The notes under the pieces: generated by a model
The model's input: only the letters and a program-made list of their open reading frames with translations
Told to the model about the DNA's origin: nothing
The model's database searches: none
Program-made: the position numbers and the translations under genes
Part shown: positions 1-63,479 of the stretch, one piece after another
Layout of the letters: every line of letters begins with the position of its first letter
Numbering within the stretch: position 1 is the stretch's first letter
Assembly (NCBI GenBank): GCA_964252035.1
Contig: OZ176201.1
Source: Podarcis erhardii
Taxonomy: Eukaryota
Direction: 5' to 3' (one strand)
DNA length: 64,000 nucleotides

Positions 1-1670
1 TCACAGAATCTCTGCTCATCTTCCATTGAATCCTTATGTGTTATTGTTTCGACCTAGTCATTGCCCCATATGTGCTGACAGGCCTTCCTAGAACACACAC
101 CTCAACCCCTTCACAGCTGCACATTGCAAGGCAATACTAATGATGACAGACAAACTGTCTATCAGGCAGCTCACCCACCACTAATAATCCTATCACTGTG
201 GAGCTACCAAGCTTTTATGGAATTCCAAAGTTTTGTGAACACAGTTTGAAAACTGCCACTCTATTATTGAAGGGCAACTCCGTAGTGACCAATATAACAT
301 CTGGAAGCTTATGTACATAACATTTGTGTTTTAGCTACTTTTATTTGAACTCCAATTAACATTAAACTATTTGTGTGGTAACTTTATTGATCTTCCCTCC
401 AAAACAAAATCAGTAAGTATTTTTAATTTAAAGACTTCCTTTTTCTTGTGTTTTTTTTTAAAGATGTGACCAACATGACAATCTTGCAACCTTAAGAATT
501 TACCTATAACTTTAATAATGTTATTGTCTTTAAAAAAAAAAAACCAATCAAAAAAAGAAATCCATCTGCAGCAATATATGTAAAAAGCTAATGTTTCACG
601 GACAAGAGTCAATCATATGCTGATGTTTCGTGGGAACTGTGGAAAAATGGTTTTCTGTCAAATGATCTGTGACCACTATAACTTGTTACAATTCAATGAC
701 AGACATTTACAAATAAATGCCTCCAAAGCAAGAGCCTATGTATATGACATTTAACTATGCATTGACAAGTTGTAGGTCAGCATCAAGTCCATGTGGAAAA
801 TTGTAATGTCATTATTTGTTTCTTTTCAACCCAACATTTATCATCATTTGCAGGGAAAACAAAGGTCACAGAAATCCCCTTTTTAAGATGATGATTTCAT
901 ATCGATGAATATAATCTGGCATCATTTGGCCAACAAATTTTCATTTAAATTTCTCTGCCTCAAACTTAACAACGAAGTTGCCAGCTGACACCAATACTTC
1001 AGTGGCTATTTCTGCTTCTGTATCCTTTCAGGATAACCACATTTTCCATAGGGGAAGTATTTCCGGTGTTTTTGGCTTGTTTTAAATTACCTGAAAACTT
1101 CATATACACTTTGTGTTCAAGCCTGTTTTCAAACTTTACAGGGTTGTATGGCTCAGCATTTTTTTTTTTTTTTTTTTTTGAGGGGGATATATCTGAGGAG
1201 AAGATAGAAGCCCCTATATGCTTCAAGAAATGGGGTGGGATTCTAGTAGCAACATCAATTCTACACTTTTCCAAACCACACCTATTTTGAACTTACTAAT
1301 AATTAACCTAAAAGGTTTTCCAACTATTAAATATATTGTCTCTCTCTTGAAAGCAGTAACATATATCCACTCCTCATCCGACCTGTCTTTCAGATTGTAA
1401 GCTTCTTACAAAACCTCCATAAGATGCCCTACATGGTACAAATTTTAGGCCCAATAATTATTAAATTCTCAGGGAAGGAATTATGACAGTCCTAAGAAGG
1501 GATTTAAATGACACATATGACAACATATTTACAGTATGTAAGTTGCACATTGTGGCGTAATATGAGTCACAATAACTGTTGCATATAATATACATTTCAA
1601 GTAACATTTTATAACTATTATGCACTGTATGTGACCTGTTGTAAGAACATATGGCTGGGCTAGTAGAGGG

Positions 1671-1672
<2 letters not shown>

Positions 1673-1716
<44 letters not shown>
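1673..1716. repeat. (GT)22 microsatellite
   Basis: Uninterrupted GT run read directly. Confidence 0.95.
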
Positions 1717-1718
<2 letters not shown>

Positions 1719-3276
1719 GTTTTCTATGTATGGCACTCAACGTGTTTTGTCACTTTCAGACCATGGCCAGTGCTGGATGATTTGGAAGAAACATACCAGA
1801 AGGCTCAAGGCAATTATTTAGTAATCCAACCCCTGCCATTCACTGCTTAGTTTTGAGTAATCAGAAGTATAAGGACACCTTGGGAGTAGTGTTGCAATTG
1901 TTTGATTGCCTTGCGTCTCTATCATCTCTGTCTCAACCTTTTAACACAACTGCATTCCTACCTTTCAACATGTAAGCAGCAACCTTTCTTGAAGTTGCAC
2001 TACTACAATGCTAAAGCTAAGAAAGTATATAGGTCATGCCATGCAAACACTTATTTTTTACACATTCTTAAAAAGCTGGCCTGCTTCATAGCACTTTGTA
2101 GTGGTATATATGTATAACAGATTAAATACAATGATTTTAATGCCAATTAGATTCACTATCAGAGAGATGGTGGCACTTCTGTATTCATTATATAATGAGG
2201 TGGTAATGGTGATCAACTAAAAGTAATTTAATACTGTTTAAATTTACCTTGAATGAATTTCATTTTTTATTGATTCATTCCATTTCACCTAATGCTCCTT
2301 CCACCCATAAAAGGTAGAGTTAGTAATGCAAAATAATCTACACTGACATATGTCATCAGATTCTTAAATGTTAGGAAATCAAAGTGAAACTTCCATGCCT
2401 GACCTACAGTGACCTACATATGACTAAGATTGCAAAATTACTTCTTAGTAAGAAACAACTTCTTACAAATTCCCACAGCAGAACTTACAATTTTAAATAG
2501 ATGTGTGGTTAATGTTTAGTGTACTCCAGAGTCCATTTAAATACTAGCATATTGATTTGGTATGCATTACATTCTACACGTAATTGATGTTTTCTTTAAA
2601 TACAGACCTCTTTCTTGTATACTATTTTGCTGTTGTTAATCTCTGAAGACTTTGTAACTTTCTACCAATGTAACACAATGCCTGCCTTCTTTTCCACATT
2701 AAATATTAGAAATATATGAAGCTTTATATCAGTGAATAATATTTTTCAGTTTGCCTTCTGGTACAATTCATTTTTTGAACTTCTGACACATGCATAAATT
2801 TTCACTCATTTGTTCTAAATTAATTCACCTAAAATTCCTACCACCAAACATCAGTCCATTAATGTGATATCTGCATTCCTACTCCATTGATGAACAAATT
2901 TAAAAGTAGGAGGGTGAGTCTAGAAAATCCTGATTACAAACACTACATAGTTAAAGCATGTTCAGGGGGAACTAATTTGTATCAAGCAACCTTAATATCC
3001 ATACCTATTATTTTTAACAAAGGAACACAGTTCCCCAGGAAAAGCCTCCTAGCCTGACTTCCACATAAGAAGCATGAAAACATTTTAATGAGCTGGTTGA
3101 GTAATGAAATATGTTTTAATACCAGTTGTAGGAAAACAAGCAAACGGAAGCACTTCTTAATAGCTAAATTATAATTGTATTTGCTAGAAGCAAACAAAGT
3201 TCAATGGGATTTCCTTCCTGGTGCAAGTAGTGTTAGGATTGCTATCCAACAATACTTTTGATTTGCTTCCAGGGTA

Positions 3277-4499: not shown

Positions 4500-5100
4500 A
4501 CAAGCAGAGCCAAGGGGTCGGGCAAGAGAGGACGGGGCACAGGGGGGGTGGGGGGCAGCATAGGTAAGGTGGGAGCATATGGCTAGCAGGACAGCCCCGG
4601 CAGAGAGGGGCTATGGGGCCGGAGAGTCGTGGCGGGGCTCTGTGCGGAGGACAGGCCAGAGGCGGCGAGAGAAAGGGGAGCCAGTCCCTGGCCAACCACC
4701 TTCCCTCCCTCCCTCCCGGCCGGCAGCCCCGCCGCCAAGCGCCACTCACCCGCTACCGAGAGCCTGGGATCCGGGCCAGTCCGTCTTCAGCTCCGCCCGG
4801 CACCAACACAGGAGCCCGAGGCCGCTCCGCTCGGCTCTTCTCCTCTGCTCCGCTCCGCCCCTCGCCGGCTCCTTCCTTCCGGGTCCCGTCGGATTACGGC
4901 AGCCGCCGCCGCCTCCTCTTTCTGCTGTGGATGGTCGGGGTCGGCTGGTGGGGCGTTTTGCCTCTGGCTGGGTCCCCCTCGAGCATCCCGCCCCCCAACG
5001 AAGGCTGCTCCTGTTCCAGCCGCTTCTCGTTCAGAAAACAACCGCCACCATCACCCTATAGCTGCTATCAAGGGGTCTATTCGGAAAGATGGTCCTTTCC
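4500..5100 (-). promoter_or_regulatory. SAR1B: CpG island with probable non-coding first exon (about 4900 to 4750) of SAR1B, divergent from SEC24A
   Basis: Seen: CpG-rich block; minus-strand donor CGG|GTGAGT with the intron starting at 4749; ETS motif CCGGAAG on the minus strand near 4875. Gene identity is inferred from the known SAR1B/SEC24A head-to-head synteny; no SAR1B coding exon is in the window. Confidence 0.55.
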
Positions 5101-7456
5101 CCTCAAGAGTACTTATGGGAGGGGGGTCTCGCTGGAGAAAGGAGAGCTGCGGCTTCAACCCAAATCCGCGGTTACTCCTTCAGATCCTTTGTTAGGCAGG
5201 CTGCATCCACTCCTTATTTCCTCACCCTTTTATTATAGTTGGGTGTTTTAGGGTTCCAAGCCCCCCCCCCAATATTTACCACGGGGCCAAGAGCAACATT
5301 TGAAAAATGAGAGATATTACTAGATCTGGTAGTCCTAGATATCACTAGGCCTTGCGTTGAGTTCTTCGCAGCGCAAGCCTAACCATGTCTACTCAGAAGT
5401 AAGTCCTGTTGAATTAAATGAAGTTTACTCCCAGGTAATAGTTATGCAGCAGGTGAAAGTGTTCCTGCTACCCTGGGGTCTGTCAAACCACTGTAACTCA
5501 CAAGAGCCCTGCTAGTATGTCTGGGTTGTTGCTATTTTATTTTATTTTATATTTATTGCATTGTACTTTTGCATTTGTATTTACTGTAGTTTTGCTATAT
5601 TTTCTTTGTAGTAATCAGTTCATCACTTTGGGGGCTGTGACCAAAAAGCAGTACAGAAAATAACCAATGATGATGGCTGGTTTGCCACACAGTCTGTGCC
5701 TTTCCCTTTCAGGATCTCCTCCACCCCAGATGCTATGCAATAAGGACTTTGATATTGCCACATGTGTTTGTATGTTTGTTGCCAGGGTGTGGGAAGTAGG
5801 AATCCCTTTGCCTAACACTGTTATGATCTGGCTTCAGCTGCCCTCAGAATGGGACTTTCAGTAGGGAGCAGGGAACTTGAAAAGCTCAGACACAATAGCC
5901 CTTCCTCATTCAGATCCTCTGGACTGAAGGAACAGGCTCTCAGGGTGCACAAGAAGGGTGCACATTGTTGCCAGGGTACATGAAGCGATAATTTGGAGAT
6001 GGGGGCGGGAGAGATGGGAAGAAGGGGGAAAAGCAGAGGGTAGAGGCCATTGGGCATTTAGCTCTGTTAGGATGCTACCTGGTAAAGATAGCTTATCGGG
6101 CAACATTGGGGTGAGGTAGTTGGTGAAGTGGGGTGCCCCTGCTACCCTTTAATATACTGGTACAAGCCTTTCCTCGAAGTGACTCACTTGTTGAAATGTT
6201 AAACATTTTGCTAGCATTATATAATTATATATCTGGTTTTGGTCATGCATTGTTTTTTAGAAAGCTAATCTTACACCCTGGGACACTTCAGTCAAACATC
6301 AAATTAGGTAGATTTCCAGGATGCAAAGGGATTGTTAGCAACTCTGCAAAGGATCATAGCCTTAAGCCCACTGATTTCATTAGATCATCTTAATTGTGTG
6401 CTGAATTGTGGTTAGGATGTGAATATAAGTAAGGTCCAATTGCTAGGTTCTTCTTTGTAAGCATGGTATATTAGCTGGATGTAAAGATAATAATCTGGGC
6501 ACTGAAATGCTGCATTCAGGAAGTCTTGGTAAATAATCTGGTAGTCTTATTTTGCAAAGTATTGTTTGCAGCATGAGAAAAAGAATGCCTGATTACCTTG
6601 TTTCTTCCCATTGTATAATATTTCCTTAACTTTCAGCTGTTGCATAGTTTAAGTTTTCAGTATTTGATCAACAAATGTCTTCTGTACTCAAGTAACTCAA
6701 GCGGTTGGCATCCTTACATGTAACTTTGTAACTGGGGCCAAGAATGGAATGCACTAAACTAACCTATATCATTCTACTAATATCATTCCAAATAATTTTA
6801 GAAAGTAAAATAGTTCTGTGATTAGAAAATGCTTTACTAGGCAAATATTTAAAAGGGTTAGGTAACATTTGTATTGTTCAGGGCAATTATAAGTAAAATT
6901 AATGTGGTTTGGAGTTTCGTGCTTGGTTTCTCCCCTTTCAGAAAAAAACCTGAAAATACAAGGTAAATAAGACTTGACTAATTAATGGGATAGGGATAAA
7001 GCTTAGTCAGTGTGGCCTTGTGTCAGGGGAATGGCCCATCTGTAGAAAATTCAACATGCCAATGTGCCACGTTCATCAGAAACATTGTCAGGATATCGGT
7101 CATAGGAATCTACCAACCATGTTCTTCTCACGTCATTAAACACTCCCTCCATTAAACACAAAAAATGATTGTGGCCTTCCTCCACGATAGAAAGATTGCA
7201 TCATGGAAACGTCTTCTTTCACAAGTCACTTGCTAAGGACGCTTTTTGGTGTACAGTAAAAGCCAGAATGAATCTTGTTGATTTCATTACCTTGTAAAAC
7301 CTATTTTCCAACCCCACCCTTTCCATCCCCACCCAGGTAAGGGATGTATTGGGACTCTCTGAAGCTGAGAATTTACTTCTTGTGACAGAGTTTAATCTAA
7401 AAAAAAATAAAAAAATTGACACAAGAACTGCATAAATTCAAGCCTACCAGCGAGCT

Positions 7457-7640: not shown

Positions 7641-8338
7641 CACTAACAGTCATTATTTGCTACTGTCTTTGTAATAATAGTGTTATGAGTTGTGGGTACA
7701 AGATTCCCCTAAAATCTTGGGTCTGATAGGTGTTAAAATTTAATCAGTGTTTGGGGTGTTAAATTTGGTTGCCAGACACAAAATTTAGCAAAGTTAAAAT
7801 ACTGACCAAACTAGCTTCCTATTTTCAGGAAATCTCCTGGGAGATTAGCCATTAACTAAAGACAAAGGGAAGGTAATGGGCCATTAGGAAAGCCAGACAG
7901 AGGGCACTTTTTGCCAGTCAGAAAATGGGAGGGGTCCGTTCCTCAACCCAGATTTAGTTTGGAAGACAAAGGAGAGTTTTGAGGTAGAGTTTTAGAGGTG
8001 ACTTTAGGATTGGGTTTTTGCAGCAATGTTGCAGTCTGTAAAATGCAGCAAGTTGGAGAGAGGGTCACAGCCATGTTTGAGAGCATGTTGGATTTCTGTT
8101 TGAATCCAAGGCTGCAGCTATGGAGGAAGCTAGATCCTCTTGGAGTGTGATGATGAGAACCTTTCCATTGTAGTCCCAGGTTGTATATATGTGTAAATAA
8201 ACCATATATCATAAAGACACTACAGTCTCTGCTACCCCTCATTTCCTGAATGAAACATGAACCCTGGGTAAGCACCTAGAAACCCCTGGAATCTTGCACC
8301 ACGCAGAGATTGGGGTAGTGTGTAGCAATACTTATGTA

Positions 8339-8597
8339 CAGTCATATCTCGGATTACAGACGCTTCAGGTTGCGTTTTTTCAGGTTATGGACCCGCTGAA
8401 ACCTGGAAGTACCAAAACGGGTTGCTTCCAGGTTTTGGGGGTTGCGCATGCGCAGAAGCGCTAAATCATGCTTTGCACATGCACAGAAGCGCTGAATCGC
8501 AACTCGTGTGCGCAGGCGCACGGCTGCGGGTTGCAAACGCTGCAGGTTGCAAACGTGCATCCCACACGGATCACATTCGTAACCTGAGCGTCCACTG
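8339..8597. mobile_element. Tc1/mariner (pogo/Tigger-like) MITE
   Basis: TA|CAGTC...CCACTG|TA ends with TA duplications at 8337-8338 and 8598-8599; internal CAGGTT/AACCTG repeats as in related copies. Confidence 0.75.
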
Positions 8598-8834
8598 TAT
8601 ATGCTTACCTTCAAACTGGCTTAAATCACAATTTGGATGGCAGATGCAGAACATGGGGTGCATTTACATTCCATTCCATATATCTATAAAAAGGAGGCTG
8701 GGCTGGAATACTGTAGAGTCCATGGACTGTCATCCTCCCAACTGCTAACAGTTGTTTCTAGGAGGGAAACGCAGCACAAATGTATCTATTGCATTTAAAT
8801 TACAAATCAAAACACAATTAGCATAGGCACAGGG

Positions 8835-9629
8835 CAGCGGCGTAGCGTGGGTTGTCAGCACCTGGGGCAAGGCAAGTAATTTGCGCCCCCTAACCCGGGG
8901 CAAGGCAAGTAATTTGCGCCCCCTAACCCCTAACCATGGTCATTAATACTGACGGCTCTACTCTGAGGCAAACTTCGTGGTGACTACTGCCCTCCATGGT
9001 GTTGTTTTTGCAATTAAAGGACCCCTGCCTCAAATAAAGCATCTTGGGGATTGGGGACTGGGATTTGCCAAGGGAGATGGGAATTGCAGTTCAGTGGCGG
9101 GTCAGGGGGAGAGGGTCCCTTCCGCGTCTGGGTGCCGCGGGCCCCTTTGCGCCAAGACGCGCGTCTTTGGGCGTCGCGGCGCAGCCTTCTTGGTCTCCCT
9201 CCCCGGCCCAGCTAGCCCCAACGCGGCTTCTTTCTGGCGCGGGGAGGGGCGGCTCTGGGGTCAGTGCGTCGGCCGGCCTCCGTCGCGGGTGGGCAGGCCC
9301 CGTCGGGGCGGGTGGGCGGTCTTGGCGCGCAGGCGGCTCCGGCTGGGCGCTTCATTCGCCGCCGGTGGCGCGTTTGGCGGGCTGCGCGCGTCCAGACAGC
9401 GACCCGAGCCGGGCCGCGTGGCGCTTGGTGCCGGAGCCTCCGCCCGCAGCGCCCCGTCGGGAGACCCGGCCGGAAGGAGCCTCGAGCCGGCTGTCGGATG
9501 TGGCTGAAGCAGCCAGGGCGGCATGGCAGGCAGCGGCTCCTCGACGACTCCGGAGGCAGCGAGCGCGCCCCCCCAGAAGTTGCGCCCGGTCCGGCCGGCC
9601 CCCCCTGCACCCCCCACGCTACGCCACTG
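8835..9629. mobile_element. Non-autonomous hAT element (795 bp) with CpG-rich cargo
   Basis: TIRs CAGCGGCGTAGCGTGGG (8835-8851) and CCCACGCTACGCCACTG (9613-9629) match at 16/17; perfect 8-bp TSD GCACAGGG at 8827-8834 and 9630-9637; 33-bp tandem duplication at 8864-8929. Confidence 0.92.
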
Positions 9630-10064
9630 GCACAGGGATTTGGCAAACACTGAGGTACATTTGATTAGCAGAGCCTGCAAAATTGCTTTGAGACCACAAT
9701 TGAGATGTAGAGCAGTTTGGTGTGAAAATGGTCTTCCAAGTCAAATCCTGCTGATGCAGAGGTTCCCTACCACTGTACTTTCTCCAGAAAACATGGACAA
9801 AATATTACTAGAAACCACCCTCCCTGAAAAAGTATTTCCCAGACAGGAAAATAATCAGACTTAGCACCATGCTTATTATACTTCTATTGATACATAAATT
9901 AGAAGAGAGTGGAGAATTCACATCATTGTAGAAGTGAAGGCTGACATTACTTTACAAGAAGATAATGGGTGGCAGTCATTATTTGATGAAGACATAAAAA
10001 GCTTTTATACTTTTCTGTGTAATGCCATGACTCTGAGGAAGGAACTAATGCATTAACACTACTA

Positions 10065-10108
10065 GGTATCTGAAGAAGTGTGCATGCACACAAAAGCTTA
10101 TACGTACC
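10065..10108 (+). ncRNA. Degenerate minimal hammerhead ribozyme (Penelope-associated), probably inactive
   Basis: Stem I GGTAT (10065-69), CTGAAGA box (10070-76), stem II GTGTG-CATG-CACAC (10078-91), AAAA instead of GAAA (10092-95), GC-TT, then ATAC (partial stem I'). Confidence 0.6.
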
Positions 10109-10136
10109 AAGAACAAACTTAGTTGGTCTCTTAAAG

Positions 10137-10457
10137 CAGTGTTTTTCAACCACTGTTCCGCAGCACACTAGTGTGCCGCGAGATGTTGCCTGGTGTGCCG
10201 TGGGAAAAATTGAAAAATTCGAAAGATTTTAAAATAAAGTATTTTATAATTTTTCATATTTCTGTTTACTTACTATTTCATAATAAAGTAATTATAAAAT
10301 ACTTTTTTGTGTTTATTTGGTTCCTATTCAAGAGAATTACTTTATAGTCAATATAGGCACAGAGTTAAATTTTTTAACATTTTCTAATGGTGGTGTGCCT
10401 CGTGATTTTTTTCATGAAACAAGTGTGCCTTTGCCCAAAAAAGGTTGAAAAACACTG
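10137..10457. mobile_element. hAT (Buster/Charlie-type) MITE, 321 bp
   Basis: Perfect 15-bp TIRs CAGTGTTTTTCAACC / GGTTGAAAAACACTG; 8-bp TSD TCTTAAAG (10129-36) / TCTTAAGG (10458-65) with central TA. Confidence 0.92.
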
Positions 10458-11410
10458 TCTTAAGGTGCTACTGGAGATATATATATATATATCGACTGCG
10501 TCAGACCAACACGGCTACCTACCTGAAACTATTATAATGATTTATGTTAATTTATAATAGAAATACTAGATTGAGGCACATATTTAAATACATCATAGTG
10601 GTTGAATTCTTTCAATAAATGATACGATTAGTCAAATGGTTAAAAAAAGACCACAGATGTGTAGTATCTTGGTTTCCTTTTTAAATATAATGAAAATAAA
10701 AGCCACTTGATAGCACTTTTGACATACTTGTTTATATTTATTTATTTTTCAGCAAAAAAAGAGTAGAATGTGGTGGAGTGCCCTTATATCTGAAAACCTG
10801 AATCCTCTGGCTGATGGGGGAACCTATCACTGTCATGTTGGTGCCACTATATGAGGAGTGGCCTGAAAAAAGTTTTCAACTTTGTTTCAGCTCACTGGAG
10901 GGGAGAAAATAACTTTTAACTCATCGACGATTCTGTATACAGTAATGAACATTTCAACTTATACCAACAGGCAAGTCCCAAAGCCTGCACTCCCAAAATA
11001 ATATAGTGTATGTAACAGGGAGTAAGTAGTTATTTCCACACGATCTAAAGGTTTCTTAAAAGATAATGTAGAATGATTTGGAAGTGACCGTTTTGCCTGC
11101 AGAATGCAAAATAACTCATAAGCAACCATACCCTCAACATTTAGATAACTATCTAAAAGAAATACAGTACATTCAAACACCAGTGTCTATAAAACAAGCA
11201 GCAACAAGAACACCCCCACCCCGCCCACGGCCCAAGCCCAAACACGCTGGGTCTGGCTGGTGGTGGTTATTCGACGGCGAAGAAAGCTCACTCTGCACAT
11301 CCTCAGAGATACCCTAATATTTGTTCGTCGCGCAGAATTACTGTGGGTCAGGTCTTGCATTGAAAATAGACACTGGCGAGCTCGGTTGCAACGAACTGAT
11401 ACAGAATAGA

Positions 11411-11540
11411 CAAGCTTCCTCAACCTCGGCTCTCCAGATGTTTTTGAGACTACAATTCCCATCATCCCTGACCACTGGTCCTGCTGGCTAGGGATCATGG
11501 GAGTTGTAGGCCAAAAAAACATCTGGAGGGCCGAGGTTGA
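11411..11540. mobile_element. Palindromic hAT-type MITE at the edge of the SEC24A promoter
   Basis: Inverted arms TCAACCTCGGC...TCCAGATGTTTTTG...CTACAATTCCCATCATCCC / GGGATCATGGGAGTTGTAG...AAAAAACATCTGGA...GCCGAGGTTGA; right TIR truncated. Confidence 0.8.
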
Positions 11541-11559
11541 CTAGAACAACAAGCAAAAG

Positions 11560-12060
11560 TCCGGGGCAGCGCGCTCGCCGTCCTGCCCCTTTAAGTACCC
11601 CCGCCTCCATCTCTCCCGGGCCGCTGCTCTTCAGCCATAAGCCCCGCCCACGACCCCTCTCGCTCACTCTGTCCCCGGAAGTGCCACGTGTACGAAGTGC
11701 GCTTGCGCGGCTGCGTCCGGTCCCTTCCGGTGTGAGGAGGGTGAGCGCCTCCCCGCCCTCCCACTCTGGGCTTGGCGCTGGGGCCGGGCGCGCAGTCACG
11801 GGAGCCCGCGCACCGACGACCCTCCTGCCGCCGCCGCCGCCGCCACCATGGCCCAGCCGGGGAGACCAGCCGCCTACAGCAGCCAGAACGGAGCTGGGCA
11901 GCCGCCGCAGCAGCAGCCGTACAGCAACGGTGAGTGAGGCCCGGCCGCGTCCGGGTGGGGTCGGGTGGGGGCAGCGCACGGACTGCGCGGAGGACCCCAA
12001 CATGCCGGCGCTGGCGCCTGGAAGGGCCCTTGGGACGGGGCGCAAGGCGAGGGAGCGCCA
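11560..12060 (+). promoter_or_regulatory. SEC24A: SEC24A CpG-island promoter and first exon region
   Basis: CpG-rich; GC box CCCCGCCC near 11642; CCGGAAGT 11675-82; TGCCACGTGT 11682-91; (GCC)n run ending in GCCACCATGG at the start codon 11848. Confidence 0.85.
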
Positions 12061-15000
12061 CCAGCAAAGCTAGGGGGGGGGGTGTGTTTGTCTAGATGTG
12101 TCTAATGAGGAGCGCTGGGTTTTCCTTCTCGTTTGTTAGCCCGCCTTGCTGCTAGAAATAAGGGCTAGACGACTCACACGGCTTTGGGAGCCTGGGAGGG
12201 TTTCTACTGCTTAACCCTGACCCAGACCTTTCCGGCTTCGTTTCCTGACCGGCTCCCTAAGTCACAGTCGCGGCTTCTCTAGTAGCGAGTCACTAATGGG
12301 GAAGTGCTTTGAGCAGTAGCACTCTTCTTCTTATTGTTCAGGCTTGATTTGATATCCGGTTTTGGCTTCATGGCAGACCTTAGTGTTTTCCTGCTAGGAG
12401 GCTTGTGAATGGCGTGGGTTCGGAGCCCTGGTGGCACCCTTAAGAGCGAAACGTTCCTTCTTAATGCAGAACAAAAGGAGAAAGTGTCGAGTGACTGCTC
12501 TGTACAGCCAGCTGCTCATGTAACCTTTTAAAGGTAGTTTCTCTATTTCACAATCACTTGGTCAATGATAAGTTGCTTCTTCGGTATAACCGCCCCAGAG
12601 TTTTTTTGTAAGAATGAAGGGCTTGACTTGAGGAGGGCTGCATGCAGTGTGGTAGTAGCTTTAGTTTGTGTTCTTCATCTGCTACAAAGAATCTAGGTGG
12701 ATCATGACCAAGAACTGCTGGTGTAAGTATTTGGATACAAAGTATAACATCAGATCTCTTTTATCTGACTGATTGCTCAAGTCTGCTTTTACTGCTGAGC
12801 ATAACTATAATCTGAGACTGGGTGGATACATGTCTGAACTATGCCCCTTCACCCACAGGTACATCTACAGATGTTTCTGGGTTAAGCAACACAATTCGTA
12901 ACCTTTAGATCTGGTCCACTGTGCATTTATGCGGTTGGATGGGGCCGATAGAAAGCATTTGCTATATATCTTTAAATTGTACTTGCTGGAAAACATAGGA
13001 GGGGAGAGTGCTCTTGTGCTTGAATCCTGTTTGCTGGTTTCTCATAGGTAATCACTGTGAGAATAGGATGCTAGACTAGATGGGTCATTGGCCTGATCCA
13101 GCAGGCCCTTCTTATGCACCCCAGTTTCAGGATTTCTGTTGTCTGAAAGAGACTTTTCTTACTGATTTCACCAGTCCTTAGTAATTACAGGATTTATGGG
13201 AATGACCACAGAACTTCATTATTTGGAATAATAAAATGCTATGGCTGGTGGCAACATTTGGATTATCTACAGTTTCATAAGCCATGGACAACCATGGAAA
13301 ACCATAGACATACACCATGGAAGTACAGTATGTTCTTCCCTATCCCTCCTCTTCCTGTTGCATGCTACCTATAGCAAAAACATTCTGTCTTCTGTTAAGC
13401 CAGAGTTCCCATTACATACCAACTGGGAAACACTAACTTAATGCCAGTCATCCTGGTTTGCAAGCAAACATCAAACCAAGGAATTATTGCTGAGACGTGT
13501 CGTGTCTTGAGTTTTGTAAACCATGGCATATAAAGCTCTGAACAGTTCTGCCTATATGACCCAATGCTGCCTCTATGTAGCAGCAGAGTGCTGCACATTA
13601 AGTTCACATAAAATCAAGTTGCTCACTCTTGATCATATTTCTAAACAGTATCTGAAATCTGTGTAGCACCTTAAAAAGGAACATTTCTTGTTTTGGAATC
13701 AAGTGAGGAAATAAGGTTACAGATTCAGTGTGGCATTTTGGAATATCTTCACTTAGCTGAAATATCCTTGAGGCCTCAGTCACCATTTTGAACTTGGTTT
13801 GCCTATGTGGCACTATGTTTATGTGGTGATTGGAGGATCTTGATTGCCCCCCCCCCCCGAAGTACGGCTCCTACGCTTAAATAGCTGCACATTTATACTT
13901 GAATATCTGCAGTTGAAATGGCTAGCTTTAAAAGATTGTTGTTTTATAAAATCATTTAATTATTTGTCTCATAAGAGATTCTAAGTAAAGTTTGGATACT
14001 TGAATGTGGCTTGTGTTTTGCCAAAATCATGAATGGCTCATATAGCATAAAGACAGCCCTTCTTCTGAACAACTTGTACTCTAAATAGAACAATCTACAA
14101 GCAGAGAGTAGGTTGCCAAAAAAGTGCTGCTGTTAAAAATGCACAGTTCTGAACAAATGAATTTAATTATGTGTAAGTATAGATGGAATAAAGAAGAAGT
14201 AAGTTTAGAACAAGCTGAAACAGGGAAACCAGTGGCCTGGATCAGACATAATGGGAAACATGAACGAGCTCCTCCTGCCCTTCATTTATTTATTTATATG
14301 CATAATTGGAGGAGATTTGTTTAGCAGAAAACCAAGGTTTCTAGTTATGCCTAGAGAGGCCCTGAGGCCACTGGAATATGTGAGGGAAAGGAGCAAAATA
14401 TCAGGCTAGTGTGATGCTTCCCGATAATGGGAGAGTTCTTTTCTTGTGGAATTAGGAATTGGTTTGGTCACCTCATAAGATGAAAAGACTGTCTGGAAAA
14501 GACCCTGATGTTGGGAAAGATTGAGGGAACAAGGAGAAGGGGACGACAGAGGACGAGATGGTTGGACAGTGTGCTCAAAGCTACTAACATGAGTTTGACC
14601 AAACTGCGGAAGGAAGTGGAAGACAGAAGTGCCTGGCGTGCTCTGATCCATGGGGTCATGAAGAGTCGGACACGACTAAATGACTAAACAGCAACAACAT
14701 CTTAAAGCAGTGTTTCCCAACCTTGTGCCTCCAGCTGTTTTTGAACTACAACGCCCATCATCCCTGACTAGCAAGACCAGTGGCAAGGGATGATGGGAAT
14801 TGTAGTTCAAAAACAGCTGGAGGCACAAGGTTGGGAAACACTGTCTTAAAGGAACGTTTTGGCAGAGTAAATAAATACCCATCCTTTACACCTGTCAGGC
14901 ATACTGCTGGCCCACATCCCTTTAACACCCATACCACCACTGTGCAAGGCCAGCAGCATAGCCCCAGTCATTGTGTGAGCTGATGTTGTGGTTTGCTGTC

Positions 15001-27000: not shown

Positions 27001-30000
27001 GAACAAAGCCAAACTTCCTTTGGGGCTCCTGCTTCATCCTTTCAAAGACCTATCGGTATGATACATTATGTAAAACTCTGAGTGCTGGGGAGTTGGCTTT
27101 CAGAAGAAAGCATTCAAATAATCCTCCAAACAATATTTGGAGGATGGAGTGTGAGCACATGCATTCCCCCCACATCCCATTTCTTCTGTAGGGCTTGAAT
27201 CAAATGGTGTGGCCAGTACCTACAAATCGGGATTGCAAACCAGGATAGATCCTTTTACGCAATATCACCCAAAGCGACAGTTGAGTGGTTTGGGTGGCAC
27301 TGCAGCTTGTGGTTTGGTTCAATACAGAAAGTAAGGAATTAGACCCTATGTACAAGGGAAGGAAGAGTGTGGTCAAAATTCCCCAAACCATTGTTTTAGA
27401 AGATCATATGACTGCAGCCAGTATAAACAGTTTTGTTAGCCTTGCCCTAGAAAAATAACATTTCCTGCAAGATGACATTTCAGAGCCCCACTTGAAAGGA
27501 GCTTTGTTAATGGAGAACTTCCCATTCTTCAACATCTTATCTATACCCTTGTGGTAGTAACTTTGTGCATCATTCAGTACTGAAGCCTTCAAAAGCCGTA
27601 TCGTGTTAGGTTTATTCTTAACAGATATTTCAGTTGCTAATCTTTAAATCAAAGAGTGCATTCAAAATCTGCCTTTCCCTGATTTTTAACGTGCTGTGAA
27701 TAGGTTGCTGTTTGCAAATAGGTAGAGGGTTTCTAGGCTGGGGAATAACTACTTGATCCTAGTGGGAAATGATTGTGGCATCGGTTGTTATCATTGTAGA
27801 CAGCCACTCTACCCTGTTTTATTATAATGGGTTTACTTTTTATGTAAATGTACATTTGAATGTGACCTTACAGGATTAAGTTTAATACTCCAGTTTAAGA
27901 ATATGCTGGTAAGGGGACTAGTGGCCTCAACTAAACAACACTTCCTGATAAAAGTTATTTAGAAGCAATTTTGATTGTATCCTGCAAAGTCATTGCACCA
28001 GTGGAACAACATCCTCTTGCAATGGAATTTCCCTTCCCTCTCCTCCTCCTACAACTGCCCCAGTTTGCTCTGGGGTTTTTCAAACCCTCTGCAGCAGTTG
28101 ATGGGGGGTAAGGAAGGAGAGGGAAAGGAAGTTTTGTGGGACAAGCTAAGTTGTACCATTAGGAACAACCCTAGTAGTCCTTCTGCTTCCATTTTACTGC
28201 AGCAATAAAATTTGTGCATTGTCACTTAAGATAATCTTTTGCTTGTAAAACTGGTGATTTAACATAATATGGTGGTCTTGCAAAACCATTTCCCACCACA
28301 GAGCATGATTCATGTATGTCTCAGTGTCAAATAAAACACTGGGCCGCAGTTAAAATAATTATTGTTATCACACATGTGGAAACCCACCTTCAGCTGACAG
28401 AGACGCTAGTGCTTAGACCATTGTACCATATCTGTTTACATCTGGGCCAGAGGTAGGCACCCAAATTACTCAAGGTGGCTAGTGCATTCCCAACACATGA
28501 CTTACAAAAGCATTCCTCTTTTGCAGCAATTGCCTGTGGTAACCTCCAGTACAATTGTGAGGTGTCGTAGCTGTAGGACATACATCAATCCTTTTGTCAG
28601 CTTTCTTGACCAAAGGAGATGGAAGTGCAATTTATGTTACAGAGTGAATGATGGTGAGTTTTCTTTGTCAAATGAGCATAAATCCACTAAAAGCATCAAC
28701 TGTATTGATATCAGATACCTGCTGTATGTTAATATGCTACCTGATTCCAGTGGGACATAATTGTATCAATTGCTAGCTCTTTCAAGGGTTTAGTGCTTGA
28801 GGATGTAACATGTTAGGGGGATAAATTTTATGGGATAACCCCTGGGAATGCTAGGTGTACGACTATATCTAGAATATTCAATCCCTAGAATGCTTGTATC
28901 TTGTAGTAAAGCACTATATTTTTCCCCCTCTTGCAGTTCCTGAAGAATTTATGTACAATCCTGTGACAAGAGTTTATGGAGAACCTCATAAAAGACCTGA
29001 AGTTCAAAATGCCACAATTGAGTTTATGGCTCCTTCTGAATATATGGTGAGGTCCTTTACCCAAGCTAGCTGCCTGCTATAATAACCCAATAAAAAACAG
29101 CTTCTGTTCAGTAGAAGACCTTATTCCCTTCCCTGTCATTTACCTGCAAAGCAGGGCTTTCAAAGTGACTACCCCTGTTCTGTGGAATAGCATCCTTGTT
29201 AAGGTACAACAGGTGTCCACTATCTGTACTTTGGGAGTCAACTGAAGACATTTTTGATATGACAGCCTTTTCCAGATGGATGAAAAGGCGACTGCCTTGG
29301 GTTTAAAAACAAATCAAGGGAACACCTGTCTTCAAGGGGTAGGTAAAGGTAAAGGGACCCCTGACCATTAGGTCCAGTCGTGACCGACTCTGGGGTTGCG
29401 ACGCTCATCTCGCTTTATTGGCCAAGGGAGCTGGGGTACAGCTTCCAGGTCATGTGGCCAGCATGACTGAGCTACTTCTGGCGAACCAGAGCAGCACACA
29501 GAAACACCGTTTACCTTCCCGCTGGAGCGGTACCTATTTATCTACTTGCACTTTGACGTGCTTTCAAACTGCTAGGTTGGCAGGAGCAAGGACCGAGCAA
29601 CAGGAGCTCACCCCGTCATGGGGATTCGAACCACCGACATTCTGATTGGCAAGTCCTAGGCTCTGTAGTTTAATCCACAGCACCATCCGCATCCCTTAAG
29701 GGGTGGGTGGGGGTTGTATTTTTTTATTTTTAAAAATAGCTGTTTTGCATGTAAATGATCTGGCAAAACATGTAAAATGCAATTTATAAATAATAAAAAT
29801 ACAAAAGTAAATCAAGGTAAGTGTACTGCTTTAGGAAAAAGTTGCTATCTTAATATAGTTCTCATTTTGATTATATTGCACTGTATTAGTCTAGGAGAAA
29901 TGGCTGTGATCCTCCCAGTGCCAAGCATAAGCATAAGTGCTTATGTTTTCAGTAATGAGGGACTACCCATTTTTGTTTGACTATAGCATTCACACCATGT

Positions 30001-33000: not shown

Positions 33001-36000
33001 AAAGTAAAGAGGTAAGAGTAATACTATGAAGTCATTATGCAAGTATATGTTTAAAACAGATGTCATTTAACTCTGTCCTTTTGATCATTTCCCCCTAGCC
33101 CATATAAGGCTATGAGCTAAAGTTTTTTGCCCACTCTAGTTGATTGGTTGCGCAAATATGTACAGTGCAAAGTTCTTTGCCAACTGACTAGGCGACATCT
33201 CTTCTGAGAACAGAATAAATGATAAAACCGCTAATCTGAATTTGAGGGAGTGGGGGGGGGAGCTGACTTCTGAAACTTTAACAGTTATACTTGAACATGT
33301 TCAATTTGAAATCCTTTTAAATCAGTGGTGTCCAATCTTTATATTCAAAGTAATGTTTTTTAAAAAATATTTCCTTTATGCTTCATGTGTATTTGGTATA
33401 GATTCCCTCTTTCTAGAAGAAACCAAATATGGTATAAACAGGTGCTTCCCAAATTATCAAATCATTTGGTATTAGTGTTTCCCAAAATATCCAAGTCTTC
33501 AGTTTTATTAGATTATGCTGCCATATACAGTGGTACCTCGGGTTAAGTACTTAATTCGTTCCAGAGGTCCATTCTTAACCTGAAACTGTTCTTAACCTGA
33601 AGCAGCACTTTAGCTAATGGGGCCTCCTGCTGCTGCCACACCACCAGAGCATGATTTCTGTTCTCATTCTGAAGGAAAGTTCTTAACTCGAGGTACTATT
33701 TCTGGGTTAGTGGAGTCTGTAACCTGAAGCGGATGTAACCCAAGGTATCACTGTAGTCTGAAGCAAAGCAAAGTTCCATGTGTGCTTGCATGTGAATAGG
33801 TAGGATATAATGCATATTACTGGAGTTGCAAGGCTGTTTTAAAGCACAGATACTTTGTAATACTAATCAAGAGGACTTTAAATCCTTATTGAAGTGTTTC
33901 TATATGAGATTCCACTTCAGGAATTTAGCATTACTTTTAAGCTCATACCCTTGGTGAACACGCTATAGGCACAATAACTAAGGTCTCTCCCCCCCCCCCC
34001 CCGCAAAAAAAGAATCCCAAATTCTGTTTATCCAAGTGCCCACCTGTGTTGCAGATATTGAAGCTTCTTTTAGTCTATCTTGAAATTATATTCAGGGAGG
34101 CGAGGATGGCAGTGGGCTGGAGTTTGGGACCACATTTTTGGACAAGTATGTGAAAGATAGAAAGAACAGTTCATTGAATTTGTGGGGTTATGTCTGATTT
34201 TGAAAGAATGTGTATCTTGGAAGGGGTTGGGTGGGTTGGGAATCTTCAGAGACCAGTTGCTATAAAATGGCAAGGCTTACTATTTGCTAACAAAATGTCT
34301 TTTATGAATGCTTCTAATGAAATTTTGAATTCTATGGGAGACATGTCTTTTGAATATTCTAATGCTCTTATTTCCCCCCCAGCTAATTCAAGATTTATTG
34401 AAAACTTTGCCTCAAATGTTTACTAACTCCCTGGAAACTCAGAGTGCTCTGGGACCTGCACTACAGGCTGCCTTTAAATTGATGTCCCCCACTGGTGGTC
34501 GGATTTCTGTCTTCCAGACACAACTTCCAACTGTAGGAGTGGGTGCTCTCAAACCTCGGGAAGAGCCTAACCAAAAAGCTGCTGCAAAGGTTAGCAAAAG
34601 CTGCTTTCTATGTATTCTTTAAGTAACCCTCAATTTAACTTGTCTTATTGGCTGCAACTGCATCCCTCAAAACACCGTTTTGAACCCATGCCCAGTCTCT
34701 TTTACGGATAAGTTGAGCTACTGCTTCAGTCCACGCGGGTTTATGGAGAACAGCAGAAATGTGTATTTTGAAGTTCTATCATTTTTACTTTTTCACCAGG
34801 ATATCCATCTTACACCATCTACTGACTTCTATAAAAAGTTGGCCTTGGACTGTTCTGGACAGCAGGTTGCAGTTGACCTGTTCCTCCTTAGCGGGCAGTA
34901 CTCTGACTTGGCTTCATTAGGTGAGTAAGGTATTTTCACATTTGTGTGAAAAGGAAAAGAAATCAGCATGATAGTTTTAACAATATGTTTTAAATAGTAA
35001 AAACTGAATCTTAATGCTGGGTTCCAGTTGGAGTATAGAAAGTTAAATTTTAATACAATAAGCTGAATGCGCACAAGTTAAATGTGCATAAGTTGTGGGC
35101 TTACTGTAACATTTCTACAATATTTTAAAATACCCTGGCACATACTTTCTCCCAATACTGTTAGTGCATCTCCCAATACTATCAATGTTAGATTGTATTT
35201 ATTGTGTTGACTGTAGTTTGTTCCTTCAATTTATCCTTGGATTTTTATTTTTAGGTTGTATATCGAGGTATTCAGCTGGTAGTGTCTATTACTATCAATC
35301 TTACCATCAACAACACAATCCTCTTCTGGTGGAGAAACTACAAAAAGAGCTGAAACGATACTTGACTCGGAAGATTGGTTTTGAGGCTGTCATGCGAATA
35401 AGGTGTACGAAAGGTCAGACAATTTAATTTGCTAATGTTAAGCAGAGCAGTGCTTCCATAAGTGCCTAAATAAGTAATTGGCAGAAGCGCACATGCAAAT
35501 ATTTAAAAGCTTAGCATCGTGAATTTAGAATATTTAGAACAGTGAACATGCATCTGTGAATGTATTAGATTCTCCCAGTGTGTTGTGATCCAGTAGTCCA
35601 GAATACTGGGTGGTTCTTCTTTCTGTCGATGAGTAGGCCAGGCTGTTTCCAAAAAGAAAAGACTTGGGTTAGTTGAATTTGGAGTCAGGAAGCAGTTCCC
35701 ACATCCCTAGAGCTGGATTTCTGCTTCTTCAGTTTTAATGGATACAGGTCTTTAAATCTTTCCTTATACAAAAAATAGCACTTTTGTCTATTTGTTCTTT
35801 ACTTTTAAAAATAAATAAAGGTAAAGGGACCCCTGACCATTAGGTCCAGTTGTGACTGACTCTGGGGTTGTGGCGCTCATCTCACTTTATTGGCTGAGGG
35901 AGCTGGCATACAGCTTCCGGGTCATGTGGCCAGCATGACTAAGCTGCTTCTGGCGAACCAGAGCAGCGCACGGAAGCGCCGTTTACCTTCCCGCCGGAGC

Positions 36001-49239: not shown

Positions 49240-50250
49240 TGCAGACTACATTTCCTCGAGTAACTGTCGTATTTTTCTGTGTCACTCCCCCAAATACATT
49301 TGTAGAGTCAGGTTTGAAGATGCCACCATCTCCTGCATTAGGACAAATGCTACAGCGTGGAGCGATTGTGACACCCACCCACCCTTGCTGTATGAGGTCA
49401 TTGCATACGCCTCATCCCCGCCCCGGCGCTATCAATGCCTCTCCCTCCAGCGCGCATGCGCAAGCACTTCTTCGCGAGGCTGCTTTCGCCATCTTTGCGA
49501 AGGGCGCCATCCTCCAGCGAAAACAGCCTCAGGTTACGAGCCCGTCGAGGGGGTTTGCCATAAGCTCTCGCGGTTACAAGTAAAAGCCTGTCCTCACAAC
49601 CCGCATCCAAGATGGCGCCGCTCGTGCCACCGGCTGGAGGCGGTACCTAAAATGGCGGCGGCGGCGGCGCATGCGCGTTAGCGAAGGGTTGTCAGAGCGG
49701 GGCCTGGCCGTTCCCCCATTGTGTGCCTGCTGCGGAGAGGAAGCTCGAGGGCTTTTCGCTGCTGCTGCTGCTGCTGCTGCCGCCGCCGCCTCGGTGCTGC
49801 TAGGGATGGAAACGGAGCCTCTGGAAGGAGACGGCGGCGGCCATGAGGGGCCTAAGACGACTTCGGCCACGGCCCCCGCACTCACGGCCTCTCAGCGCCG
49901 GGCCGAGATTCGCCGGAGGAAACTGCTGATGAACTCGGAGGATCGGATCAACCGGATCATGGGCTTCCACCGGCCAAAGGCGGGTGAGGACGGGGCGTGG
50001 CTTTGGGGGGGGCGGTTTTTGACTGCGCTGGGCATCCCCTGCCTTGCCAGGGCGCTTATGAATGACCTCCTTCCTTCCTTGCCGGGGGTGGGAGCTCAAC
50101 ACGCGCCCCTCTTTCCCCGTCAAGTCCTTCCCGAACAATGGGATAACATAGTCCGTATATTAACGAGCTAATCTGATCGCTCAAAATGACGCTGCCCCTC
50201 CTCCCCGAGCGATATATCGCATTCGTCTTATTTGAGGTGCTCCCCCCCCC
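49240..50250 (+). promoter_or_regulatory. CAMLG: CAMLG CpG-island promoter
   Basis: NRF1-type GCGCATGCGC at 49452-61 and 49667-76; YY1-type CGCCATCTT 49487-95, CAAGATGGCG 49608-17 and AAAATGGCGG 49649-58; GACTACATTTCC 49244-55. Confidence 0.8.
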
Positions 50251-62365: not shown

Positions 62366-63479
62366 ATGACATTAACACTTGAATAGATCTTGCTTCCCCA
62401 TTAAGCTTCTCCAAACCCAAAGCTATGGATTAAGCACACAGAGAAAGTCAGGCCTCCTGTCTTTTGGCAGCTTCAGCCCAGACTAAAAATTGTGACTAGC
62501 TCTTGGCTAGTCTCCTACCTACAATATGTCATCTCTTCCTGGAAGCACCATTAGCTTCTTGTTCCTATTGCAACATGGCCAACTCTCTATTCTTGTAACA
62601 AAAAAGGTGCTTAGCAGCCCAGCTAGGGCTGTTAACTTAAAAAACAAAAAAACTGCTTTGGCCAGTTCAGCAGTTCCTTCTACCACAGACTACAGTTTTA
62701 TAGATTAAAAAAATATCACAGACTGGTTGGGATCCACAGGCATTAGCCAAACCAGCCACCCAATCCTATAGCAATACTCTACCATCTCCATTAAGATAAA
62801 TAGTTGCATACCTGGTCTGTGTTAGACATGAATCCAAGTTGTAAGTAGGAAGTATTTGCTATTGCATCATATTAGCTAGTTTTGGGTATTTGTGTATGTT
62901 AATATTAATACTAGATGGTTGTACACAGGGCATTGAAGCAATTGCCTCCAGCTTTTTCCAACCCAGCACCCAGGCATACATTTTGGGGAACAATTTCTTA
63001 ATTTCTGGGGTGGTAGTGCTGCTTTTGCAAACCAACTTAGATCAGGCCATGTTAGTGTGTCCCTCCCCACCAGTTGAAGACCAATGCATTAAATACATTA
63101 TAAATTTATTGGGTGTATTACTTTTCTGTTCTCCTGGAGGTAACGCCCGCATTTTCTGTCTCTGGCATCAAACCGTATTGTAGCTAAAAAGAGAATTGGT
63201 GAATTTTATTTTATATCAAGGTGGCTTAGAAATCAGAACGGAATCACAAACAAGTCAGTATTAAATGCAAACATTAAGAAGCAGCCGATAAATGGAACGT
63301 GTCTCCTAGCTCAGCACCGTCCATTACAGAAGAGATTACAGCTTGCTCAATTACAATTGCAATCCATAGGTTGAACATCAGCTTGCCATGGACATCCGTC
63401 TGGTCACTATGAGAACGAGATGTTGGACTAGATGGGCTTTGGGACCCATCCAGAATGGGCTCTGCTTGCGATCTCATCA

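What the first reader, a model, noticed from the sequence alone, without database searches (positions are those of the whole stretch)
8835..9629. A 'CpG island' that is actually a hAT transposon with promoter-like cargo (Pack-TIR candidate)
Seen: 17-bp TIRs (16/17), a perfect 8-bp TSD GCACAGGG and no transposase ORF. The interior (about 8935-9560) grades from AT-moderate sequence into dense, undecayed CpG sequence. It contains GC boxes (GGGGCGG twice), an ACTACA-like half site (GGGAGATGGGAATTGCAGTTC, about 9072-9092), a CCGGAAG ETS site and a Kozak-context ATG. It sits about 2 kb upstream of the SEC24A core promoter. Known: non-autonomous TIR elements can capture host fragments (Pack-MULE/Pack-TIR). 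Inferred: this element may have captured another gene's promoter or first exon and moved a whole CpG island, a possible mobile-promoter system in lacertids.
Basis: partly seen in the sequence, partly recalled or inferred. Interest (0 to 1): 0.75.

Follow-up and report, generated by a model that had tools for sequence, protein, structure and literature searches.

The report
Cargo-carrying hAT mini-transposon upstream of SEC24A
A 795-base cut-and-paste (hAT-type) mini-transposon carrying about 630 bases of CpG-island-like foreign DNA jumped in about 2 kb upstream of a lizard's SEC24A gene; it is a real, recent insertion of a known kind, but where the cargo came from and whether it acts as a promoter remain unshown.

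Summary
A 17-bp inverted repeat (16/17) ends the element at 8835 and 9629, and a perfect 8-bp duplication (GCACAGGG) flanks it. A contig from a related organism joins 8825 directly to 9629, which is the exact empty site.

The two ends (8835-8935 and 9568-9629) belong to a very abundant short hAT MITE, at roughly 10^4 times unique depth. Its ordinary copies join about 8897/8929 straight to 9568-9573. The 632 bp between them (8936-9567) is therefore an insert at one point of the MITE.

This insert occurs at only about 8 times unique depth in the host and about 13 times in the relative. In the host, the multi-copy contigs run unbroken into both MITE arms, so the composite was mobilised as a unit.

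The source is not identified:
- No protein, Pfam or Rfam match.
- No copy elsewhere in the window.
- The only context without MITE arms is one 1.7-kb contig, guessed to be RNA, in the relative.

Promoter evidence is weak:
- GC-box and ETS counts equal chance.
- The 'ACTACA half site' is a fragment of a common palindromic repeat.
- This copy has lost at least 7 CpGs.

Earlier notes of this scan describe many similar hAT cargo elements elsewhere in this genome.

The parts
8827..8834 (.). Left copy of the 8-bp target-site duplication GCACAGGG
   Evidence: Read directly. The empty-site contig of run X5 keeps a single copy (record 18).
8835..8851 (+). 5' terminal inverted repeat CAGCGGCGTAGCGTGGG
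   Evidence: pair I4, 94% complementary.
8835..8935 (+). 5' arm of a very abundant short hAT MITE. It includes a 33-bp tandem duplication (8860-8929) with TTGCGCCC motifs and a short CCCTAA-like run.
   Evidence: Summed k-mer depth is about 970,000 (X1) and 553,000 (X5), against unique depths of 27-30 and 13.7. Tandem repeat. Joints 8897->9571, 8928->9568 and 8929->9573 in other copies.
8936..9567 (.). 632-bp cargo, absent from ordinary family members. It is AT-moderate at 8936-9100, then a CpG-dense block.
   Evidence: Depth is 204-219 in X1 (about 7-8x unique) and about 150-180 in X5 (about 11-13x). X1 contigs 4 (8906-9219) and 6 (9296-9563) run into both arms. No Pfam, Rfam or protein relatives.
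9069..9098 (+). One-arm fragment of a palindromic lizard repeat (mir-5408-like hairpin family).
   Evidence: BLAST of the element against the window hits 14781-14809 (90%), 11449-11469 and 29417-29435. Full repeat copies were read. Rfam mir-5408 matches 11438-11522 on both strands, below gathering score.
9100..9567 (.). CpG-island-like core of the cargo (GC about 0.76, CpG o/e about 0.95)
9523..9567 (+). ATG in good Kozak context followed by 15 codons (MAGSGSSTTPEAASA) up to the cargo/MITE junction. Coding status is unproven.
   Evidence: An in-frame stop lies at 9505-9507. No relatives of 62-198 aa were found. The X15 contig stops matching at 9537, five codons in.
9568..9629 (+). 3' arm of the MITE, with a TTGCGCCC motif at 9580
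   Evidence: Depth is about 626,000 (X1) and 429,000 (X5). Motif.
9613..9629 (-). 3' terminal inverted repeat (CAGTGGCGTAGCGTGGG on the minus strand)
9630..9637 (.). Right copy of the target-site duplication GCACAGGG
11500..12200 (+). Context only: a CpG island taken as the promoter of the downstream Sec24 (SEC24A-like) gene, about 1.9 kb from the element's end
   Evidence: GC 0.68 and CpG o/e 0.80. Sec24 exons lie on the + strand at 28527-28652 and 34383-34571. The TSS itself was not mapped.

Best explanation
This is a lineage-specific insertion of a non-autonomous hAT element.

How it arose and moves:
- A short MITE present at the order of 10^4 copies took up, at a single internal point (CTAACC | CCCCCAG), 632 bp of CpG-island-like DNA that is not part of the MITE.
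- The likely source is host DNA from a transcribed, promoter-proximal region, copied in by template switching or gap repair.
- The composite kept both arms (about 100 bp and about 60 bp) that a transposase supplied in trans needs. It was therefore mobilised as a unit and reached about 8 copies in the host and at least 13 in a relative.
- One transposition put it 1.9 kb upstream of the SEC24A CpG island and made the 8-bp duplication.

Shown: the insertion, the empty site, the foreignness of the cargo to the MITE, the low multi-copy number, and that the copies share both junctions.

Inferred: the host origin of the cargo, the capture mechanism, and mobilisation in trans.

The copy is probably a passive passenger. 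It has begun to lose CpGs, and nothing shows that it drives transcription.
For: - TIRs and TSD.
- Clean empty site: X5 contig 18 aligns to 8574-8825 and then directly to 9629-10090.
- The insertion is present in organism A. Contigs bridge 8571-8858 and 9606-10090 at unique depth 27-30. A 94-bp contig (9220-9313) carries this copy's five private alleles exactly.
- The ends are at 22,000-40,000x unique depth, the interior at about 8x (X1) and about 13x (X5).
- Cargo-less family members: joints 8897->9571 (37 RNA reads, 22 starts), 8928->9568, 8929->9573.
- X1 contigs of depth 219 and 204 cross from the cargo into both arms without a break.
- A context without MITE arms exists. X15 record 11 is 1,698 nt at depth 72.9, matches only about 8950-8972 and 9015-9537, and has 370-390 and 763 unlike bases on either side.
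- The cargo contains a decayed fragment of an unrelated palindromic repeat, as host DNA would.
- The cargo sits at one point of the MITE consensus. One insertion explains this more simply than several deletions sharing a breakpoint (inference).
- Literature: animal Pack-TIRs are mostly hAT, and a frog hAT-N carrying a 5' UTR reached three transposed insertions (PMC8277862). Plant Pack-MULEs prefer GC-rich DNA and the 5' ends of genes (PMC5861414).
Against: - No parental locus or gene was identified.
- In organism A every visible copy has the MITE junctions, so no parent is seen there.
- X15 is RNA only by guess, and its contig misses 14 bp and 30 bp at the two cargo edges.
- Contig depth is not a true copy number.
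- Distinct TSDs of the other copies could not be read, so segmental duplication of some of them is not excluded.
- X1 may be the very sample the window was assembled from.
Confidence: 0.62

Rival explanations
1. The interior is the transposon's own sequence: the promoter, leader and first codons of an autonomous hAT transposase gene. This element would then be an internal-deletion derivative, like Ds from Ac, and the short MITE a further deletion. Nothing would have been captured.
For: - The layout (5' end, GC-rich leader, ATG in Kozak context, a few codons, 3' end) is what deletion derivatives look like.
- The interior is a uniform low-copy consensus, and no host gene could be named.
- The 1.7-kb contig that continues 763 nt past the ATG region could be a transposase transcript. 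The length window (62-198 aa) could not have found a transposase of about 600 aa.
Against: - In organism A the contigs at full depth run from the cargo straight into both MITE arms, so no longer copy is visible.
- The X15 contig has about 370 unlike bases where the 5' arm should be.
- This model needs two or three independent deletions that share the breakpoint at 9568.
- The interior holds a decayed fragment of another repeat.
- All stranded RNA reads on the cargo have the first mate on +. In the usual library type that means RNA antisense to the ATG.
- Unchecked notes of this scan report the same kind of element with cargo traced to host genes.
Confidence: 0.2
2. One reading: the cargo is an intact promoter that stays unmethylated and active after transposition. 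This copy would then act as a new upstream or alternative promoter, or a regulatory CpG island, for SEC24A or an upstream transcript.
For: - CpG o/e is still 0.94 over 530 bp.
- GC boxes, an ETS core and a Kozak ATG are present.
- The same sequence is transcribed somewhere in organism C (X15 contig; about 10 strand-consistent X23 reads).
- It landed 1.9 kb from a housekeeping-type CpG island.
Against: - Motif counts equal shuffled expectation.
- 7 of the 14 listed private substitutions of this copy are CpG-to-TpG/CpA. That is about 2.9 times the per-site rate elsewhere (p = 0.056) and hints at germline methylation.
- The high CpG content is explained by youth: about 2% divergence from the consensus.
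- In X15 the only contig with cargo sequence is the one without MITE arms. No MITE-cargo junction contig was listed.
- No RNA data exist for the organism that has this insertion.
Confidence: 0.1
3. The interior is a nested insertion of another, uncharacterised repeat into a MITE copy, not captured unique host DNA.
For: The interior is multi-copy and non-coding. Nested repeats are common here: the flanks at 8115-8674 and 10035-10434 are repeats.
Against: - Depth is only about 8-13x, and in organism A all of it is joined to the MITE arms. No free-standing repeat family is seen.
- The cargo edges carry no TSD, TIR or poly-A of their own.
- CpG o/e near 1 is unusual for an old interspersed repeat.
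Confidence: 0.06

Closest known systems
Multicopy Pack-TIRs of animals, e.g. Pack-hAT-N8_XT of Xenopus tropicalis carrying 291 bp of the CAPSL 5' UTR (Tan et al. 2021, PMC8277862)
   Same: A non-autonomous hAT with foreign, 5'-gene-like internal DNA. It was mobilised after capture, has 8-bp TSDs, and its orthologous site is empty in a relative.
   Different: - The parental copy is not identified here, so the paper's definition is not fully met.
- Apparent copy number (about 8-13) exceeds the frog example's three transposed insertions.
- The cargo is a whole CpG-island-like block.
- That 100-genome survey's text mentions no lizard.
Pack-MULEs of rice
   Same: TIR elements that take up GC-rich host fragments, favour the 5' ends of genes and open chromatin, and raise local GC content where they land (PMC5861414).
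   Different: They belong to a different superfamily (Mutator, 9-11-bp TSD, long TIRs), occur in plants, and often carry exon fragments with identified parents.
Ordinary internal-deletion hAT derivatives and MITEs (Ds-type, hAT-N families)
   Same: TIRs starting with CAG, an 8-bp TSD, no transposase, mobilisation in trans, and a very high-copy short form.
   Different: The interior here is not shared with the high-copy short form. It sits at a single point of that form and looks like host CpG-island DNA containing a foreign repeat fragment.
Other hAT elements with CpG-rich cargo noted by this scan in the same genome (CENPW, GNAL-XL and RAPGEFL1 cargos; unchecked AI notes)
   Same: The same genome, the same architecture (hAT ends plus CpG-island or first-exon-like cargo), and reported multi-copy status.
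   Different: Those cargos were assigned to named genes; this one could not be. I could not compare their TIRs with these.

Membership tests
hAT superfamily, non-autonomous element | 8-bp target-site duplication flanking the element | tested here: met
   GCACAGGG at 8827-8834 and 9630-9637. The empty allele has one copy. The TSD does not fit the weak nTnnnnAn target consensus, which I recall from general knowledge.
hAT superfamily, non-autonomous element | Short TIRs beginning with CAG (YARNG) | tested here: met
   CAGCGG... and CAGTGG..., 16 of 17 bases. That this start is typical of hAT is general knowledge.
hAT superfamily, non-autonomous element | Match of the ends to a curated hAT family consensus, or to an autonomous partner with a hAT transposase | not testable with these tools
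   No Repbase or Dfam library and no host genome were on hand. There is no transposase in the element.
Pack-TIR (definition of PMC8277862) | Internal sequence flanked on both sides by the terminal parts of one TIR-element family | tested here: met
   Both arms are at about 10^4 x depth. Cargo-less members join 8897/8929 to 9568-9573.
Pack-TIR (definition of PMC8277862) | Internal sequence is not transposon sequence | tested here: inconclusive
   It is absent from the short form, is low-copy, and contains a fragment of an unrelated repeat. Origin from a longer autonomous element is not excluded.
Pack-TIR (definition of PMC8277862) | A unique parental copy elsewhere (at least 90% identity) with no TIR element within 100 bp | tested here: inconclusive
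   - None lies in the 64-kb window.
- None is visible in organism A's contigs.
- There is one arm-less 1,698-nt contig in organism C, about 97% identical over about 8950-9537. Its locus is unknown.
Multicopy Pack-TIR (transposed after capture) | Several copies of the composite with distinct TSDs | tested here: inconclusive
   Junction contigs are at about 8x unique depth, and this copy has its own TSD and empty site. The flanks of the other copies could not be read through the high-copy arms.
CpG-island promoter | CpG-island composition | tested here: met
   For 9100-9629, GC is 0.76 and CpG o/e is 0.94.
CpG-island promoter | Transcription starts inside it, with unmethylated, open chromatin | not testable with these tools
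   - No RNA run exists for the organism carrying the insertion.
- Motif counts are at chance.
- The CpG-decay hint points the other way.

The most novel reading that the evidence does not exclude
In lacertid lizards an active hAT MITE family repeatedly picks up CpG-island 5' ends of genes and spreads them. Whole promoter-like islands would then be mobile, and this copy would have seeded a new functional CpG island or alternative promoter in the region upstream of SEC24A.
Probability: 0.1. Interest if true: 0.75.

Novelty: new member of a known kind. Interest (0 to 1): 0.4.

Why it matters
Cargo-carrying DNA transposons that go on transposing are rare in vertebrates. One survey of 100 animal genomes found four multicopy cases and mentions no lizard in its text (PMC8277862).

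A recent, cleanly bounded insertion with a known empty site is a good natural experiment. It asks what happens to a CpG island dropped into a new place: does it stay unmethylated, does it fire, does it disturb a neighbouring housekeeping promoter?

Taken with the other, unchecked notes of this scan, it suggests that this lizard lineage holds many such elements. On its own, this copy is one more instance, without a named source gene.

Tried and rejected
- Protein identity of the cargo. Six ORFs on both strands gave no Pfam hit. A word search with the 206-aa ORF found nothing, and so did one with the ATG-initiated ORF, residues 1-40. The second search sees only proteins of 62-198 aa.
- Six-frame translations of the window copy and of the variant versions are R/G/A/P-rich, with every frame largely open, as expected for 76% GC non-coding DNA.
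- I did not run the big representative search. Only 15 residues are cargo-encoded, too few to reach significance.
- Rfam over 8000-12500 found nothing in the element. rDNA spacer origin is rejected, because the depth of about 8x is far too low.
- A cis parent is rejected: BLAST of the element against the window found only a repeat fragment of about 29 bp.
- Look-ups of the scan's notes by sequence were blank for both halves.
- A check of whether the CpG island at 4500-5250 is also transposon-borne found no inverted repeats. A search for SAR1B-like peptide motifs in the window found nothing.
- The strand of the cargo-like RNA could not be fixed, because the library type of X23 is not stated.

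Full report
**Observation**

The element is as described.
- CAGCGGCGTAGCGTGGG at 8835-8851 and its reverse complement with one mismatch at 9613-9629 are the only matches in the 64-kb window, even at three mismatches (0.04 expected).
- GCACAGGG abuts both ends, at 8827-8834 and 9630-9637.
- The interior runs from GC 0.49 and CpG o/e 0.31 (8935-9100) to GC 0.76 and CpG o/e 0.94 (9100-9629).
- No ORF in it matches Pfam.

**Context**

- Sec24 exons lie on the + strand at 28.5 and 34.4 kb (zf-Sec23_Sec24 and Sec23_trunk).
- CAMLG (Get2_like) lies at 53.5-57.8 kb.
- The CpG island at about 11.5-12.2 kb is therefore plausibly the SEC24A promoter, about 1.9 kb from the element. The TSS itself was not mapped.

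**It is a real, recent insertion**

I laid contigs and reads of four public runs on 8035-10434.
- In organism A (run X1, possibly the assembly's own sample) contigs at unique depth 27-30 bridge flank to arm on both sides (8571-8858 and 9606-10090). A 94-bp contig (9220-9313) reproduces this copy's private alleles exactly.
- In organism C (run X5, unique depth 13.7) a 714-bp contig aligns to 8574-8825 and then directly to 9629-10090. It lacks exactly the element plus one TSD copy, with no footprint.
- The flanks of that contig differ from the window by about 1.3%.
- So the site was never occupied in that lineage, and the composite arrived as one piece.

**Anatomy**

- The two ends are enormously repeated. 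Summed k-mer depth is about 970,000 and 626,000 in X1, and 553,000 and 429,000 in X5. That is 22,000-40,000 times unique depth. The tool warns that this is not a strict copy number.
- The interior at 8995-9474 stands at only 204-219 in X1 (about 7-8x) and about 150-180 in X5 (about 11-13x).
- Other family members skip the interior: joints 8897->9571 (37 RNA reads from 22 starts), 8928->9568, and 8929->9573 with six bases between.
- The element is therefore a short MITE, with arms at 8835-8935 and 9568-9629. It has a 33-bp tandem duplication and TTGCGCCC motifs at 8881, 8914 and 9580.
- It carries a 632-bp insert (8936-9567) at one internal point.
- In X1 the multi-copy contigs (314 bp at depth 219, 8906-9219; 283 bp at depth 204, 9296-9563) run unbroken from the cargo into both arms. 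So essentially all of the roughly 8 copies there are the same composite.
- In X5 there are also multi-copy internal-deletion variants (8972->9286 at depth 95; 9313->9411 at depth 121).

**Where did the cargo come from?** This could not be settled.
- Nothing else in the window resembles it, apart from a repeat fragment of about 29 bp.
- Rfam finds nothing in it.
- Its ORFs have no Pfam domain and no relatives in two word searches.
- All six frames look like translated GC-rich non-coding DNA.
- Only 15 codons follow the Kozak ATG at 9523 before the MITE arm begins. That is too few for any search, so I did not spend the big protein search.
- The single context without MITE arms is record 11 of run X15 (organism C, RNA by guess). 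It is 1,698 nt at depth 72.9 and matches about 8950-8972 and 9015-9537 at about 97%. It has some 370-390 unlike bases before the match and 763 after, and no MITE arm.
- It is the only X15 contig covering the cargo's interior, judged from bin depths equal to its own depth. The silent flank stands at depth about 2.
- About ten raw RNA reads of X23 fall on 9075-9314, all with the first mate on +. In the usual stranded protocol that would mean RNA antisense to the ATG, but the protocol is not stated.
- This contig is the best candidate for a parental, transcribed locus. It could instead be a truncated copy or a longer transposon.

**Why capture is favoured over 'the transposon's own leader'**

- (i) The cargo occupies a single point of the short MITE. 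One insertion explains this, whereas the deletion model needs several deletions sharing the 9568 breakpoint.
- (ii) In organism A no copy continues beyond either junction.
- (iii) The arm-less contig has unrelated sequence where the 5' arm should be.
- (iv) The cargo contains a decayed one-arm fragment (9069-9098) of an unrelated palindromic repeat. Full copies of that repeat lie at 11438-11522 (a sub-threshold Rfam mir-5408 match on both strands) and at 14740-14830.
- (v) Unchecked notes of this scan describe many hAT elements in this genome with CpG-rich cargos, some assigned to CENPW, GNAL and RAPGEFL1. These are leads, not evidence.

I put capture of host DNA at about 0.6 and the autonomous-derivative reading at about 0.2.

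**Is it a promoter?** The evidence is thin.
- GGGGCGG (two copies) and CCGGAAG (one copy) are no more frequent than in shuffles of the same composition (p = 0.28 and about 0.1).
- The 'ACTACA half site' is the repeat fragment described above.
- The multi-copy consensus is shared by X1, X5 and X15. Against it, this copy has 14 listed substitutions, a missing 14-bp repeat unit and a missing T.
- Seven of the 14 are CpG-to-TpG/CpA in this copy (8996, 9191, 9210, 9220, 9295, 9499, 9501). That is about 2.9 times the per-site rate elsewhere (Fisher p = 0.056).
- This hints at germline methylation, and it means the island looks 'undecayed' mainly because it is young.
- No RNA run exists for the organism that carries the insertion, so activity at this locus is untested.

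**Comparison with what is known**

- The closest described things are the animal Pack-TIRs of Tan et al. 2021. They report 370 cases in 100 genomes, 208 of them hAT. Only four are multicopy (three in frog, one in alligator), for example 291 bp of the CAPSL 5' UTR in hAT-N8_XT. The paper's text mentions no lizard (PMC8277862).
- That definition requires an identified TE-free parental copy, which is not met here. I therefore file this as working like a multicopy Pack-hAT, with membership inconclusive on that one feature.
- The taste for GC-rich gene 5' ends parallels rice Pack-MULEs (PMC5861414).

**Verdict**

This is a confirmed, cleanly bounded, lineage-specific insertion of a cargo-bearing hAT MITE. 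It is a new member of a known kind. The scan has met the same kind before on other DNA of this genome. The claims of a captured promoter and a mobile-promoter system remain hypotheses. Interest is moderate (0.4), and higher only if the genome-wide pattern and promoter activity are shown.

Noticed in passing
window 11438-11522 and 14740-14830: These are copies of a palindromic lizard repeat (arms ...GAGACTACAATTCCCATCATCCCTGAC... and the inverse). The first gives a sub-threshold Rfam mir-5408 match on both strands (43 bits against a gathering score of 90). It sits right at the edge of the SEC24A CpG island and carries ACTACA-type motifs.
   Followed up: partly
window 8115-8674 and 10035-10434: The DNA on both sides of the insertion site is itself high-copy repeat, with summed depth up to about 82,000 and 520,000 against a unique depth of 28. 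Only 8675-8834 and 9635-10034 are unique. The stretch 8442-8498 holds two tandem GCGCATGCGC-like (NRF1-type) palindromes.
   Followed up: no
window 8972-9286 and 9313-9411 (as joints in run X5): Organism C carries multi-copy internal-deletion variants of the cargo (depth 95 and 121 against a unique depth of 13.7). These were not seen in organism A, which suggests separate amplification histories in the two lineages.
   Followed up: no
window 4500-5250: A further CpG island (GC 0.61-0.71, CpG o/e 0.65-0.77) lies 3.6 kb upstream of the element and has no inverted repeats around it. By vertebrate synteny recalled from memory it could be the SAR1B promoter, but no SAR1B-like peptide motif was found in the window.
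   Followed up: partly
window 49250-50250, 53551-57795 and 63250-63750: CAMLG (Pfam Get2_like, two exon-bearing ORFs) follows the Sec24 gene and has its own CpG island. Another island lies at the window's end, probably the DDX46 promoter according to an earlier scan note.
   Followed up: partly
window 1464-1723: There is a long (TG/CA)n microsatellite.
   Followed up: no
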